Shown: positions 59,800 to 64,000 of the stretch, piece after piece
Layout: each line of letters opens with the position of its first letter
Numbering within the stretch: the first letter of the stretch is position 1
DNA from: Perkinsus chesapeaki ATCC PRA-425
Taxonomy: Eukaryota > Protista > Perkinsozoa
Assembly (NCBI GenBank): GCA_013115145.1
Contig: JAAPAO010000003.1
Coordinates: 1-64,000, forward strand
DNA: 64,000 nucleotides
Direction of reading: 5' to 3'
Translations under genes and position numbers: made by a program
The notes under the pieces: model-generated
Told to the model about the DNA's origin: nothing
What the model saw: the letters and a program-made list of their open reading frames with translations, nothing else
The model's database searches: none

Positions 59800-61816
59800 G
59801 CTACAAGATACGTTGGTAAGACGGGACAGATGTCACTGCGTCGTCGATCGAAGCTCCGCTGCCTTGGTGAGGACTTCCTGAGAATGAGCCCTCCCAATCT
59901 ACTCCCCAGCCCCTACTACCTCCACCAGTGCCTTATCCTCCGTACCCATATGGTCAACACTCTGAGTGAGACATCTCCTCAGAGTTCGCAACTGACCGAT
60001 GCAAATGCCTATACTACAGAGCTGCCTACCCGGGACTACCTCCTGCGGCCCCCAGGTGGCCCCTTCTCTCGTTCGCAGTGCCTCCACATCATCCCCGATA
60101 TCCTTTTCGGCGGTCGATGAGCAGCTGTCCAGCAATGCGTCCAGATACCAGTCCAGAAACTTCCTAGAGCTGCCGGTGCCTCCAGGTCGGCGCAAATCCC
60201 CGAGCTCTGCGACCTAAGCAAGCGAACTGCCGCAATGCAGCTCCTATAAGAACGCTACTGATTGGCCGCTTTGCTTCACTCCCCAAAAAACCCGGCGTTG
60301 AAGGGACTTCACTATCCTACCGAGGGGAAGGTCCTGCCATTCATCCCCGGCTGAGGCAACATCCTCACCGCTCGGCTCGTACCTGCCTGGTATATACAAG
60401 GGGGCGCCATATCCAAATCAGGTCCGAAACGACCATGAATTTCGGCAACCTAGAGCATTCCTCCGCTGTTGCAGAGCTCTACACGAAGAATAAGAGCCCA
60501 CTATTTTATACGTTGTACTATGCCCCTTCGATTGGTACGTATAACATCACCAAGCAGCCTATGGAAATTTAGAAGGGCGAGCCCTCAACTTTCGGGTACC
60601 CTGAATGCAACTAAAATTGGTATAGCATCCCTCATTGGCTGAAGTAGAAATAGAGTAGTGGTAATTATCCAGGCCTGGAGACCACCCCAACTTTCCCCAA
60701 ATTATTATACTACTTCTCCGCACTGCCAACCTGACCCAGCGCTCTCTCTTGAGCCCGTGTGGCCCGCACAAGGAGACTAAGCAGGTGCTCGGTGACTTGT
60801 GCGTGGCGGCGACAGAACTCCTCTTGCTCCTTGGCCGATAGGGACCCTTCAGCCTGATACCGTGAATCCTCAGCGAAGTACCGTAATGTTACCTTTTTTA
60901 GATTGGGGAGGCTGAATAGTTGACCAAGCGGCGCAGAGGACGAGTCAGGGAAGCGATGGCCGAACTCAGGCAGCTGGTCAGCTCCTAACAGCAATGTCCT
61001 TCAGCGGTGATACAGGAGACACCAATGCGATTTGCGTGCAGTAGGTCGTTAACATGTGACCGACATAGCACAAGTCGAATACCCATTTATTATTATTATG
61101 AATTGACACTCGTGACACTGAATAGCATATCCCTGTTGCGGCTACAATATGGAGAGGCCTTTTCATAAGCATTCCCTCCAACGACTCCGAAGCAGATGCC
61201 TGCCTATTACTGCAACAAGCACACAAAACTCAGTGTGAGGCAGGATAGAGTCCGCCTCATTCTGGTACCAATAGTGGTTTAATTAACCGAGTTCATGAAA
61301 CATTACTGCCAGCAATGTTATGCTCAACAGCGACTATCTGGCTATTCGCAATCCACGGATCAGAGTCGTGAGGGTTTCACAGTGAAGAGAATGCCACACA
61401 CTTTGGCCCAAACTTGTATTATGGACTTATCGAAAAACGAGGCGGGAGACATGAGCTTCACGATACAATATGGATTCAAATGAGGAGATCTGTTCTCAGC
61501 GAAAGCATCACAGCTCAGTGCATTCCTTTTGGGCTCAACATTTGATATCCGTTAGAGCCTCCCCCCTTATTACCAACACCGAGAGCCTTCAAAGTCTCTC
61601 CCAGCGCCAACCAGAGTGCCTCCACCTCCTCATCGGCCTCGGTAACCTCCGAAGAAGCCTCTGACATCTCCTCCTGAACACATCGCAGATTTCCTCTCCG
61701 CCGCTTGGTCCCCTGAGCACTACATCTGACGGCTCATCATCAGACTCTCTAATCTCCTTCAGGGAGGACGGCGTAGATTCCTCCATTTCGTAGTCTTCCG
61801 AAGCCTTTCGAGCCAT
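59800..61816 (-). CDS. Hypothetical protein with acidic N-terminus
   Basis: MARKASEDYEMEESTP...; LSAKEQEEFCRRHAQVTEHLLSLLVRATRAQ; KFLDWYLDALLDSC. Confidence 0.45.
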
Positions 61817-61894
61817 TATATGGACAGTAGCAAGCAGGGCTATAAAGGGACAGGGATGTCTCTCATCCGAGCTGGGAAATCGGCCCCGAACTTC

Positions 61895-62240
61895 CTTGAA
61901 CTATTTTATATGATGACCTACCAACTACAGTCGGTTCACTTTTCCAATAGCCATGGTTGCCAAGGCTTCACTCTATACGCGAGACATTTCTCTTCTCATG
62001 AACTTGCCCAAACAATAAGATATATTACCATCCATAAAGAGAATAGTCCTGAACCTCTATTACTCGAGATAAGTCTTATGACCTATTAATTACAGTCGAG
62101 TGCCCTTCTGCAATAGCTACAATGCTTGCCAAGGCTTCACGCTTACGCAAGACATTTTATTATTCATCGACTTCTCAGAAAATAAGATACATTAGCATCC
62201 ATAAACTACATGAATCTATTACTAGCTATTATGACCATAT
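61895..62240. repeat. Degenerate tandem repeat, unit about 165-169 bp, about 2 copies
   Basis: Shared blocks: TACAGTCG (61926/62091), TTGCCAAGGCTTCAC (61957/62126), AATAAGATA (62014/62181). Confidence 0.85.
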
Positions 62241-62370
62241 CAAATCCTATCGGGACCCTGGGACCGTCTAAGGACCTTTAGTCCCTCGAGGTATGCGAAT
62301 ACCAACTCAACTAGTATATACGAAAATGCACAAGAAGTGAGATGCTATAAATAGAAACATAAGGACAAGG

Positions 62371-62730
62371 TCAAGGGAGGCACCAAACCACAATGGCTAG
62401 GAGGATGAGTAACTGACATCACGACAAGGCTCCGCCGGCATATGGAGGGACACCGTACCAGCACCACAACGACAACGTGTTTGAATATCCGCCAACACTT
62501 ATTCTTTTTCTTCTTAGGATGGCCCTGCTGGGTGTCGTCAGGATCAACCTGAGTAGAGGGCAATGGCCCAAAGCAACTGGTATCTCAGTACACTTTCCGG
62601 TGTATGAGGCTCTGGAGCCTCTATGTCCTCCACAGTGGGGCCTGGGTCTGGCTCTTGCTCTTTGCTCTGAAAAGGGTGCAAATATTCCCCCAGTGACATT
62701 GGAAGTTATCTTTACATGGAATGCTCCCAT
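62371..62730 (-). CDS. 73-aa tail-anchored microprotein with N-myristoylation-like start (4 exons)
   Basis: Exons 62730-62716, 62666-62592, 62548-62459 and 62412-62371 with three phase-0 GT-AG introns (49, 43, 46 nt). Product: MGAFH|SKEQEPDPGPTVEDIEAPEPHTPES|VDPDDTQQGHPKKKKNKCWRIFKHVVVVVL|LLILLAIVVWCLP*. Confidence 0.75.
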
Positions 62731-62867
62731 ACTGGACCGAAGAGGGAGCGCTGAGGTACTTTAATTTGATGAAGACAAGCTCAAACATGAACTGCAAGAT
62801 TCCACTCCACTGTGCATCCCTGCAACACAACTCAACAAGCTACTGAAAGCTACAGAGACTAGTCGGC

Positions 62868-64000
62868 TCACGAAGGGAGAACAAAGAACACTATTATCCA
62901 CACAATGAGTATCTGTCATAGGAGTAATGGAGGCTCGGCGATGCCGTCCGGGCTTACCAACAGGAGGATCGATATACACGCTACTTTACGCCAAAAGTTC
63001 TTCTTCTTGCTGTGATGGGTCTCCTGTAGCTCCTCCACAACCTGCCAAAAATTAGTCAATTAGTTTCCCAAAATTTTCCGAGATTTTCACAAATTTCACG
63101 ATTTTCCAATGCAGTGAAGAGATTCCGATGCTCAACTCTGGATGCCTGATACCAGGCTGCCTCAGCAGCCACCAAGGAGTCATTAAGGGACACCAAATCT
63201 TGATATTCAGAGGAGCAGCGGGGTACGTGGCAGTGAGGTGAGCAAGGCGGACCTACACCGCCAAGAGTTCTAGTCCCGAAAACACAGCTACACTACTGCT
63301 GATATTTCTTGTCTCATTAGGAAAATATATTCTAGTGAACATCCTATCATTGGGGGCATCTGGTAATTTTTGAGGAACACCTTTCAGTAATGCTGGGTGA
63401 ACCCTAGCAGCCAGCACGATCTCCCTCGACTACCTTCCCAGTGGAATCCTTAGCTTGCTCCATTTGCTCGTCCACCGCATCTATCGTATCCTGTTGCTTC
63501 ACCACTTCACCATGCAATTGATGATACATATCCTAGCTCAAACCATGCACCTCGCTCTCAGCCTCCTGCGCTACTACCTGTACCACGCCCATATTCTTAT
63601 CGACCTTTTTAAGATCCTTCAGCTTCTGACGCTGCAATGCTTCATCCAGTGAGACATCTTGGTCCTGATCACCCACGGCTTAACCAACCTCCCCGACTGC
63701 ATTCCCACCTGCAGTAGAGGCTCCCGAGCGGATGAATAGGAGCTCGACGGTGTGAATGGATTCAACGACTCCGGGTACGGTTGCCGAGGCTCTGAAACCA
63801 CACAGGTTTACGCCGCTATCCCAACGCAGCGGCAGTGGATCGAGGCAAGAAATACAACGTGAGAATACGCCTCTCCCGAAGCATGGAGGAACACCAAATG
63901 TTGCCAGAAAGAATGCAATCGATACTTCTTTTTGCTCTAAAACTAACTACTCGTTCCAGATACCCAGCCTGTTGGACCAAGCTTCTGCCCCGGCCCATGG
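62868..64000 (-). CDS. Syntaxin-like Qa-SNARE (5' end uncertain or beyond window)
   Basis: Spliced QRQKLKDLKKVDKNMGVVQ|DMYHQLHGEVVKQQDTIDAVDEQMEQAKDSTGK|VVEELQETHHSKKKNFWRKVACISILLL|ILIVWIIVFFVLPS* contains a SNARE heptad with Q zero layer and a C-terminal TM. Confidence 0.85.

What the first reader, a model, noticed from the sequence alone, without database searches (positions are those of the whole stretch)
62371..63041. Hidden SNARE-less microprotein that copies the syntaxin tail and adds a myristoylation-like N-terminus
Seen: 138 bp downstream of the syntaxin stop lies a four-exon 73-aa gene absent from the ORF track. Its last two exons parallel the syntaxin's last two: both start with phase-0 GTT, both carry H.KKKN..WR, both have an intron inside the TM, and the ends are LLILLAIVVWCLP* versus ILIVWIIVFFVLPS*. 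The SNARE helix is replaced by an acidic Pro-rich linker, and the start MGAFHSK fits the Gly2/Ser6/Lys7 NMT consensus (established). Inference: a partial tandem duplicate anchored at both ends, acting as a SNARE decoy or membrane tether. Alternatively these exons supply a second C-terminal anchor to the syntaxin by alternative splicing.
Basis: partly seen in the sequence, partly recalled or inferred. Interest (0 to 1): 0.72.

Follow-up and report, generated by a model that had tools for sequence, protein, structure and literature searches.

The report
Tail-anchor-only copy of a SNARE gene

Summary
On the minus strand, 138 nt after the SNARE stop, four GT..AG-bounded exons (62730-62716, 62666-62592, 62548-62459, 62412-62371) read as 73 aa. 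The last two parallel the SNARE's last two exons in phase, intron position inside the membrane helix, and a polybasic-W-R-helix-LP end.

RNA contigs confirm every SNARE intron. They show that the "syntaxin" is a 141-aa mini Q-SNARE with no Habc domain. A roughly 87-91% identical transcript shows the copy's last intron spliced exactly as predicted.

The unit sits at the same place in Perkinsus marinus, with the same exon and intron layout. Synonymous sites are saturated between the two species. Even so, the last 33 codons keep frame, splice sites and stop (pN 0.28 against pS 0.71). They are the only conserved island in the roughly 1-kb spacer.

So this is not a decaying duplicate. Best reading (about 0.5): a 5'-truncated tandem duplicate kept as its own small tail-anchored protein gene.

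Still open:
- Use as alternative 3' exons of the SNARE (about 0.25).
- Introns 1 and 2 and the 5' end, none of which were seen in RNA.

Gly2 is not conserved (MTAPQ and MAAPQ in relatives), so myristoylation is unsupported.

The parts
62716..62730 (-). Tail unit exon 1 (putative): ATG + 4 codons (MGAFH) followed by a GTAAAG donor
   Evidence: No RNA support. It parallels the last five codons of SNARE exon 3 (ATG GGC GTG GTA CAG|GTA) at 9 of 15 nt. P. marinus has ATG-N12-GTA at L006 5061-5075 (MTAPQ).
62592..62666 (-). Tail unit exon 2: a 25-codon acidic, Pro-rich linker
   Evidence: It is 75 nt in both species, and the following intron is 43 nt in both. There is no sequence constraint (pN 0.62, pS 0.66). 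P. marinus has in-frame stops just upstream of its acceptor, so the exon must be spliced to an upstream coding exon.
62459..62548 (-). Tail unit exon 3: linker end, polybasic KKKKNKCWR and the first part of the membrane helix
   Evidence: Its C-terminal 20 codons are conserved in P. marinus (KKKKMAKCWKISKRIALILL; 0 of 20,000 shuffles reach the score; tblastx E 9.5e-8). The donor is used in a divergent transcript (X5 record 14).
62371..62412 (-). Tail unit exon 4: rest of the membrane helix, ending CLP + TGA
   Evidence: P. marinus reads LLIILIIVVTCLP*, with codon-position identity 0.79/0.86/0.50. X5 record 14 matches 62369-62413 with 4 differences and is joined directly to exon-3-like sequence.
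62958..63041 (-). SNARE exon 5: layers +6 to +8, polybasic linker and the start of the TMD. This is the parent of tail exon 3.
   Evidence: Both flanking introns are confirmed by RNA contigs in X1, X2, X3 and X5. The peptide is 100% identical in P. marinus.
62868..62912 (-). SNARE exon 6: rest of the TMD plus the stop. This is the parent of tail exon 4.
   Evidence: Intron 62913-62957 is confirmed by contigs.
63434..63532 (-). SNARE exon 4: core of the SNARE motif with the 0-layer Gln
   Evidence: Its closest solved relatives are the SNARE motifs of Sso1, Sso2 and syntaxin 1.
63578..63664 (-). SNARE exon 3, ending ..KNMGVVQ|
63709..63791 (-). SNARE exon 2 (..PRQPYPESLNPFTPSSSYSSAREPLLQ). Exon 1 (ATG at 64199) and the spliced-leader site at about 64226 lie just beyond the window.
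   Evidence: (joints at 63791/64172; spliced-leader loose end at L003 3726).
62828..62836 (-). GTTGAGTTG motif 31 nt after the SNARE stop
   Evidence: The same 9-mer lies 59 nt after the tail-unit stop (62303-62311) and 62 nt after the stop of the upstream ALDH gene (about 64249-64257).
62303..62311 (-). GTTGAGTTG motif 59 nt after the tail-unit stop
61816..61841 (-). 5' end of the next gene: spliced-leader acceptor at 61841, ATG at 61816 (MARKASEDYEMEE..). This bounds the tail unit downstream.
   Evidence: spliced-leader loose end at L003 1341. Its ortholog follows the tail unit in P. marinus.

Best explanation
The stretch is a 5'-truncated tandem duplicate of the neighbouring 141-aa syntaxin-like mini Q-SNARE gene. 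It arose before this Perkinsus species and P. marinus split. Its four exons mirror the SNARE's exon 3 end (..MGVVQ|), exon 4, exon 5 and exon 6, with every junction in phase 0. The copy of the SNARE-helix exon has lost all sequence constraint and become a short acidic, Pro/Gly-rich linker. Selection has kept the reading frame, the splice sites and above all the C-terminal module: a polybasic stretch, K-C-W, an 18-19-residue hydrophobic helix, then C-L-P and the stop. Most likely it is expressed as its own small mRNA, starting at the inherited internal ATG. The product would be a 73-aa tail-anchored protein inserted post-translationally with its acidic disordered part in the cytosol, probably in the same membrane as the parent SNARE because it kept the parent's anchor features. 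Shown: the anatomy, the conservation, the constraint on the anchor, and transcription plus splicing of intron 3 in a close homologue. Inferred: the independent 5' end, the start codon, the use of exons 1 and 2, tail-anchored insertion, and co-localisation.
For: The exon model and canonical sites are. Homology to the SNARE tail rests on a peptide similarity reached by only 15 of 20,000 shuffles, plus the same phase and the same intron position in the helix. In P. marinus (L006) the unit lies between the SNARE and the same downstream gene, with exon 2 of 75 nt, intron 2 of 43 nt, exon 4 of 42 nt, and exon 3 differing by 18 nt, a multiple of 3. Synonymous sites are saturated (SNARE pS 0.86), yet the tail's last 33 codons show pN 0.28 against pS 0.71, and exon 4 codon positions are 0.79/0.86/0.50 identical. 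In the shuffle test between the two species, 0 of 20,000 reach the score for exons 3 and 4. An unbiased tblastx of the whole spacer finds only these two exons, in the predicted frames, at E 9.5e-8. X5 record 14 joins exon-3-like to exon-4-like sequence exactly at the predicted junction. For an independent gene: exons 2-4 contain no ATG in this species, and P. marinus has in-frame stops before exon 2, so an upstream coding exon is required. Both species offer ATG + 4 codons + GTA. In X5 both SNARE contigs run unbroken through every candidate donor while the tail contig has similar depth. A GTTGAGTTG motif follows the stops of three consecutive units, including the SNARE and the tail unit.
Against: No read shows the exon 1|2 or exon 2|3 junction, a spliced leader, or a 5' end for the unit. 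In the spliced-leader-primed libraries X1-X3 both flanking genes were caught and the unit was not. The exon 1 region does not align between the species, and an ATG-N12-GT in a 390-nt spacer is only mildly unlikely by chance (my estimate, about 0.1-0.3). Tail exon 2 shows no significant similarity to SNARE exon 4, so the claim that the whole unit mirrors exons 3-6 rests on structure alone. The NCBI model of P. marinus (P0002) fuses the SNARE to the unit. The 134 unseen letters of X5 record 14 could attach it to something else. No homologue was found in the protein word searches.
Confidence: 0.5

Rival explanations
1. The unit has no 5' end of its own. Its exons serve as alternative 3'-terminal exons of the SNARE, spliced from the SNARE's exon 3 or exon 4 donor, or from the GT of the Val codon after ..FWRK in exon 5. 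This would give the SNARE a second membrane anchor behind a long flexible acidic linker, or a SNARE cut short at layer +5. Such an isoform would probably be fusion-incompetent and regulatory.
For: All these donors, and the acceptors of tail exons 2 and 3, are in phase 0 in both species. Tandem exon duplication typically begins life as alternative exons (established knowledge). The P. marinus gene model P0002 joins ..KKKNFWRK to the exon-2-like linker. Transcription in a spliced-leader organism reads through neighbouring genes. The unit was absent from the spliced-leader-primed libraries as a separate mRNA.
Against: No SNARE-to-tail joint appears in four runs, while every canonical SNARE joint was seen. 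In X5 the SNARE contigs of both alleles cross all candidate donors without a break although the tail contig is equally deep. P0002 is visibly ab initio: it omits the RNA-confirmed exon 2, drops the SNARE's own TMD and mis-splices the last exon into a frameshift. The start of tail exon 3 has no heptad pattern and carries Pro, and it is unconserved.
Confidence: 0.25
2. The unit is a transcribed but functionless relic of the duplication. Read-through transcripts get spliced at surviving sites, and no protein matters.
For: The linker (exon 2 and the start of exon 3) evolves as fast as synonymous sites. There are no relatives in the protein databases. It was not captured in X1-X3.
Against: At saturated neutral divergence, a relic would have lost its frame, splice sites and stop. 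Instead all six splice sites, the exon lengths (75, 42, and a difference of 18 nt) and the TGC CTC CCT TGA end are kept. Non-synonymous change in the anchor is well below synonymous change (pN/pS 0.40). The surrounding introns and spacer do not align at all.
Confidence: 0.08
3. One reading: an N-myristoylated, doubly anchored microprotein acting as a SNARE decoy or membrane tether.
For: In this species the spliced model starts MGAFHSK, which fits the Gly2/Ser6/Lys7 preference of N-myristoyltransferase (plus established knowledge of the NMT consensus).
Against: Gly2 is replaced by Thr or Ala in the best candidate start exons of P. marinus and a related strain. Ser6 and Lys7 depend on an unverified splice, and P. 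marinus reads MTAPQ|DK. A second possible start (ATG 62699, MSLGEYLHPFQ-) exists in this species. There is no SNARE motif with which to act as a decoy.
Confidence: 0.07

Closest known systems
Syntaxin isoforms with alternative C-terminal anchor exons (for example mammalian syntaxin 2 and 3 splice variants; from my own knowledge, not tested here)
   Same: Duplicated terminal exons encode a second polybasic linker plus membrane helix next to the original ones, in the same phase.
   Different: In this locus no junction from the SNARE to the second anchor was seen. The copy carries its own ATG exon and a linker exon, and the helical layers encoded at the start of the duplicated exon are destroyed.
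SNARE-motif-only regulators (tomosyn, amisyn; from my own knowledge)
   Same: They are SNARE-derived proteins that keep only one module of the parent.
   Different: This is the mirror image. Those regulators keep the SNARE helix and lack a functional anchor. This unit keeps the anchor and has lost the helix, so it cannot enter a four-helix bundle.
Small tail-anchored proteins (Sec61 beta, RAMP4/SERP1, phospholamban; from my own knowledge)
   Same: Under 100 aa, a disordered cytosolic N-terminal part, a single C-terminal helix with one residue beyond it, and a juxtamembrane basic/Cys patch.
   Different: There is no sequence relation. This one is demonstrably derived from a SNARE tail and is known only in Perkinsus.
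P. marinus gene model PMAR005269 (P0002, 'hypothetical protein' / t-SNARE coiled-coil homology domain protein)
   Same: It is the ortholog of the SNARE here (94-100% identical exons) and already contains the exon-2-like and part of the exon-3-like sequence of the tail unit.
   Different: The model fuses two units, skips the RNA-confirmed SNARE exon 2 and the SNARE's own TMD, and ends in a frameshifted ..MANY*. The anchor-only unit is therefore not recognised as such in the annotation.

Membership tests
SNARE proteins (Q-SNARE/syntaxin): the tail unit | A roughly 53-residue heptad SNARE motif with a central Q/R layer | tested here: not met
   Exons 2 and 3 read as an acidic, Pro/Gly-rich sequence with no heptad pattern. 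There is no Pfam hit and no significant similarity to SNARE exon 4.
SNARE proteins (Q-SNARE/syntaxin): the tail unit | A C-terminal polybasic linker plus a single membrane helix | tested here: met
   KKKKNKCWR followed by 18-19 hydrophobic residues and the end CLP*. It is homologous to the SNARE's own tail and conserved in P. marinus.
Syntaxin (Qa) family: the neighbouring gene | A SNARE motif with a 0-layer Gln and syntaxin-like sequence | tested here: met
   The heptad L-V-M-V-Y-L-V-Q-I-V-M-A-T-V-L-T can be read from the RNA-confirmed exons. The best solved relatives are Sso1, Sso2 and syntaxin 1 (E 1.3e-3). The Pfam SNARE domain scores only below its threshold.
Syntaxin (Qa) family: the neighbouring gene | An N-terminal three-helix Habc domain | tested here: not met
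   The RNA-defined gene runs from the spliced-leader site at about 64226 and ATG 64199 to the stop at 62868. That is 141 aa, with only about 37 residues before the motif.
Tail-anchored proteins | A single hydrophobic helix at the extreme C-terminus and no signal peptide | tested here: met
   Read directly from exons 3 and 4. The helix ends one residue before the stop, and the N-terminal part is acidic and not hydrophobic.
Tail-anchored proteins | Post-translational, GET/TRC40-type insertion | not testable with these tools
   This needs an insertion assay or localisation in Perkinsus.
N-myristoylated proteins | Met-Gly start with a small residue at position 6, and conservation of Gly2 | tested here: inconclusive
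   The consensus is met in this species if intron 1 is spliced as modelled. Gly2 is absent from the candidate start exons of P. marinus (MTAPQ) and of strain contig L007 (MAAPQ). The junction is unverified.
Alternative 3'-terminal exons of the SNARE | Junction reads from a shared upstream SNARE exon to the second anchor exons | tested here: inconclusive
   None appear in X1, X2, X3 or X5, although all canonical joints are present. However, these are contigs from small runs, which show presence and not absence.
Decaying duplicate (pseudogene) | Neutral evolution: loss of frame, splice sites and stop; pN about equal to pS | tested here: not met
   The frame, six splice sites, the exon lengths and the stop are kept at saturated divergence. 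The anchor shows pN 0.28 against pS 0.71.

The most novel reading that the evidence does not exclude
A SNARE gene has spun off a conserved 'anchor-only' paralogue. This would be a tail-anchored microprotein that shares the parent's membrane helix and juxtamembrane Cys/polybasic patch, and that acts at the membrane level on the parent SNARE. It could compete for sorting, palmitoylation or helix-helix contacts, or tune fusion. That would make it a class of SNARE regulator working through the anchor rather than the SNARE motif.
Probability: 0.15. Interest if true: 0.6.

Novelty: new variant of a known kind. Interest (0 to 1): 0.42.

Why it matters
If it is an independent gene, it is a clean natural example of a new microprotein born from a 5'-truncated tandem duplicate in a trans-splicing protist. 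The start codon would be inherited from an internal Met, and only the membrane anchor would be under selection. It would also be a SNARE derivative of the opposite kind to tomosyn and amisyn.

Practically, it shows that this unit is missing from, or mis-fused in, Perkinsus annotations: PMAR005269 joins two units and drops the SNARE's own anchor. Perkinsus species are important shellfish parasites, but nothing here bears on virulence.

Tried and rejected
1. Paralogues in the same assembly. DNA and exon-peptide searches of G000 found only the locus itself. The roughly 90% divergent copies seen in RNA are therefore not in the assembly.
2. Pfam on single exons gave nothing useful.
3. Word-based protein searches found no candidate. 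Queries were the 72-aa open frame around exon 3 and the tail part of P0002 (residues 101-147). A search with the whole of P0002 found only itself and a fragment.
4. The metagenome scan with P0002 had 208 pattern hits, none confirmed.
5. I tried to show that tail exon 2 descends from SNARE exon 4 by sequence. The similarity is not significant, so that part rests on exon structure only.
6. DNA similarity of introns and flanks between the two copies is not significant, so the duplication is old.
7. I tried reading SNARE contig ends as poly(A) sites and rejected it. The next gene's contig stops before its own stop codon, so contig ends are arbitrary.
8. The TTTT spliced leader in X1-X3 is not the organism's own. 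Perkinsus leaders read ..CCATCTTGG.. or ..CCATCTGG.. (PMC3101222), so the TTTT most probably comes from the DinoSL primer of those RT-PCR libraries.
9. Rfam found nothing in the 5.5-kb locus.
10. The spacer alignment around exon 1 between species is unreliable.
Full report
**What is there**

All genes in this corner of the window lie on the minus strand.
- MGAFH (62730-62716)
- a 25-codon acidic, Pro-rich exon (62666-62592)
- VDPDDTQQGHPKKKKNKCWRIFKHVVVVVL (62548-62459)
- LLILLAIVVWCLP* (62412-62371)

Together they make 73 aa. The neighbouring gene's last two exons read VVEELQETHHSKKKNFWRKVACISILLL (63041-62958) and ILIVWIIVFFVLPS* (62912-62868).

The three putative introns are 49, 43 and 46 nt and are bounded by GTA..CAG. 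That puts them in the class of short introns that RNA confirms in this locus. I treated the spliced model exon by exon and by reference. The joined 73-aa product was not searched or folded. In one search the codons of several exons were only pooled for counting substitutions, and nothing joined was printed or sent anywhere.

**The organism and the neighbouring gene**

Earlier notes of this scan call the genome a Perkinsus. I confirmed this through an ortholog with conserved gene order in P. marinus ATCC 50983 (GCA_000006405.1).

I laid four small runs on 60501-66000. X1-X3 are spliced-leader RT-PCR metatranscriptomes, and X5 is a run of the organism itself. The contigs confirm every intron of the SNARE gene:
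- 62913-62957
- 63042-63433
- 63533-63577
- 63665-63708
- 63792-64171

They also show a spliced leader joined at about 64226, just beyond the window, with the ATG at 64199.

The gene upstream is an aldehyde dehydrogenase that ends at about 64320. So the "syntaxin" is only 141 aa: a short N-terminal peptide with an NPF motif, one SNARE motif with a 0-layer Gln, a polybasic linker and a membrane helix. There is no Habc domain.

Its SNARE motif is closest to Sso1, Sso2 and syntaxin 1 among solved structures (E 1.3e-3). Pfam's SNARE model stays below its threshold.

The leader letters in X1-X3 carry TTTT, whereas Perkinsus leaders read TCTT or TCT (PMC3101222). The TTTT most probably comes from the DinoSL primer of those libraries. 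The joint at an AG acceptor still marks a trans-spliced 5' end. The next gene downstream has its own leader site at 61841 and its ATG at 61816, which bounds the unit.

**Is the parallel more than chance?**

Within this genome the evidence is moderate.
- The penultimate-exon peptides align with a score reached by 15 of 20,000 composition-preserving shuffles.
- The last exons alone are not significant.
- DNA similarity, introns included, is weak, so the duplication is old.
- The structural parallels are exact. Both exons start in phase 0 with GTT. The intron lies 10 residues after W-R inside the helix, and 13 or 14 codons remain to the stop.

**The decisive comparison**

A search with the 33-aa SNARE exon found the P. 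marinus model P0002 and a strain contig. The P. marinus locus (L006) has the same order: SNARE, tail unit, then the ortholog of the downstream gene.

The P. marinus unit consists of:
- a 75-nt acidic exon (DKNQNQTEGHTTDLEEQGGGTAGDH)
- a 43-nt intron
- a 108-nt exon ending ..SKKKKMAKCWKISKRIALILL
- a 47-nt intron
- a 42-nt exon, LLIILIIVVTCLP*

So exon 2, intron 2 and exon 4 have identical lengths in the two species. Exon 3 differs by 18 nt, a multiple of three. All splice sites and the TGC CTC CCT TGA end are kept.

The two species are so far apart that synonymous sites are saturated: SNARE exons 3-6 show pS 0.86 and pN 0.03. Introns and spacers do not align.

Against that background:
- The last 33 codons of the tail unit show pN 0.28 against pS 0.71.
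- Exon 4 is 0.79, 0.86 and 0.50 identical at codon positions 1, 2 and 3.
- No shuffle out of 20,000 reaches the observed peptide scores.
- A blind tblastx of the whole interval from the SNARE stop to the next gene returns exactly these two exons, in the predicted frames, as its only real match (E 9.5e-8).

The linker, by contrast, changes as fast as synonymous sites (pN 0.62, pS 0.66). It keeps only its frame, its length and its acidic character.

**Transcription**

No contig of X1-X3 lies on 62371-62730. In X5, record 14 (233 nt) matches 62369-62413, which is exon 4 plus the stop, with four differences. It then continues upstream with letters that are 25 of 31 identical to the end of exon 3, read as R-I-F-K-H-V-T-I-V-L-L. 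The join is exactly at the predicted exon 3|exon 4 junction.

X5 also holds a SNARE contig identical to this locus and another about 90% identical. Both are spliced, so X5 is RNA-derived and carries a second allele, paralogue or strain that is absent from the assembly. A close homologue of the unit is therefore transcribed and loses intron 3.

Its 5' part therefore remains unseen.

**How is it expressed?**

In this species exons 2-4 contain no ATG. In P. marinus two in-frame TAG codons sit just before the exon 2 acceptor. In both species exon 2 must therefore be spliced to an upstream coding exon.

I noticed that ATG GGA GCA TTC CAT|GTA parallels the last five codons of SNARE exon 3, ATG GGC GTG GTA CAG|GTA (..NMGVVQ|). 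The whole unit then mirrors SNARE exons 3(end)-4-5-6 with all junctions in phase 0. On this reading the start codon is an inherited internal Met.

P. marinus has ATG ACA GCC CCA CAG|GTA 172 nt after its SNARE stop, and the strain contig has ATG GCA GCC CCA CAG|GTA. This support is modest:
- The region does not align between the species.
- By my estimate such a pattern would occur by chance in that spacer with a probability of about 0.1-0.3.
- Tail exon 2 shows no significant similarity to SNARE exon 4.

The rival is splicing from a SNARE donor. The donors of exons 3 and 4, and the GT of the Val codon after ..FWRK, are all phase-compatible in both species. The P. marinus annotation uses the last of these.

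That model is clearly ab initio, however. It skips the exon 2 that RNA confirms in the window's genome, drops the SNARE's own helix and ends in a frameshifted ..MANY*.

Further points against the rival:
- No SNARE-to-tail joint was seen in any of the four runs.
- In X5 both SNARE contigs pass unbroken through all candidate donors while the tail contig has a similar depth. A de Bruijn graph assembly would not be expected to allow this if the two shared a branch point (this is an inference about assemblers).

Point against an independent spliced-leader mRNA: both neighbours were caught in the leader-primed libraries and the unit was not. Size selection or a non-leader 5' end could explain that.

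I put the independent small gene at about 0.5, alternative 3' exons at about 0.25, and a functionless relic at under 0.1.

**Myristoylation and "decoy"**

MGAFHSK fits the N-myristoyltransferase preference (established knowledge). But several points weaken it:
- Gly2 is Thr or Ala in the candidate start exons of the relatives.
- Ser6 and Lys7 depend on an unverified splice.
- This species has a second possible start (ATG 62699, read-through MSLGEYLHPFQ-).
- The Met-Gly is most simply a leftover of the parent's NMGVVQ.

Without a SNARE motif the product cannot act as a decoy in a four-helix bundle. Selection has kept a basic patch, a juxtamembrane Cys (a typical palmitoylation position; from my own knowledge), an 18-19-residue helix and a C-terminal CLP. 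The committed mechanism is therefore a tail-anchored microprotein with an acidic disordered cytosolic part, probably sharing the parent SNARE's membrane. What it does there is unknown.

**Comparison and novelty**

The closest known things are:
- syntaxin splice variants with alternative anchors
- SNARE-motif-only regulators such as tomosyn and amisyn, which are the mirror image
- generic small tail-anchored proteins

I found no description of an anchor-only SNARE derivative. Paper searches for Perkinsus with SNARE and syntaxin gave nothing relevant, and the protein databases hold no relatives. With these tools those blanks are weak evidence.

I rate it a new variant of a known kind: a partial tandem duplicate turned into a small tail-anchored gene. 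The interest is moderate.

Noticed in passing
L006 4001-5560 (P. marinus GG671811.1, gene PMAR005269 = P0002): The public gene model looks wrong. It reads through the first donor, skips the exon 2 that RNA confirms in the window's genome, and leaves the SNARE at ..FWRK so that the SNARE loses its own membrane helix. It then fuses to the downstream unit and ends in a frameshifted ..MANY*.
   Followed up: yes
window 62828-62836 and 62303-62311; also about 64249-64257 (L002 2249-2257): The 9-mer GTTGAGTTG lies 31, 59 and 62 nt after the stop codons of three consecutive units (SNARE, tail unit, ALDH). Only four exact copies occur in the 64-kb window, where about 0.5 is expected. With one mismatch there are 24 matches against 15.3 +/- 3.4 in shuffles. 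It may be a gene-end or intergenic processing signal. The two other exact copies (15479 on the plus strand, 24181 on the minus strand) could not be tied to gene ends.
   Followed up: partly
window 62009-62038 and 62176-62205 (spacer between the tail unit and the next gene): A direct repeat with a 167-nt period (two copies, 87% identical in the 30-nt core, longer by eye) inflates this spacer to 529 nt against 236 nt in P. marinus.
   Followed up: partly
L003 2381-3034 (window 62881-63534), RNA contigs X1 record 2 and X5 record 15: A second SNARE transcript about 90% identical to this locus, spliced at the same introns, is present in both studies but has no counterpart in the 41.7-Mb assembly. 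It could be a purged haplotype, a missing paralogue or a second strain. A variant 5' exon (letters TTTTTGGA at the 63791 joint) goes with it.
   Followed up: partly
L003 3291-3701 (window 63791-64201): Contigs X1 record 4 and X2 record 9 run unspliced through the 380-nt first intron of the SNARE in RNA libraries. This is either intron retention or pre-mRNA, or DNA carry-over.
   Followed up: no
window 63740-63760 (SNARE exon 2): The short N-terminal peptide of the mini-SNARE carries ..PESLNPFT.., conserved in P. marinus (..PESLNPFT..). NPF is the classic EH-domain binding motif (from my own knowledge).
   Followed up: no
L006 5076-5150: In P. marinus the candidate first intron of the unit begins directly with a compound microsatellite, (GTA)n(GAA)n(GTT)n(GTG)n. 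The related strain contig L007 ends in the same repeat.
   Followed up: no
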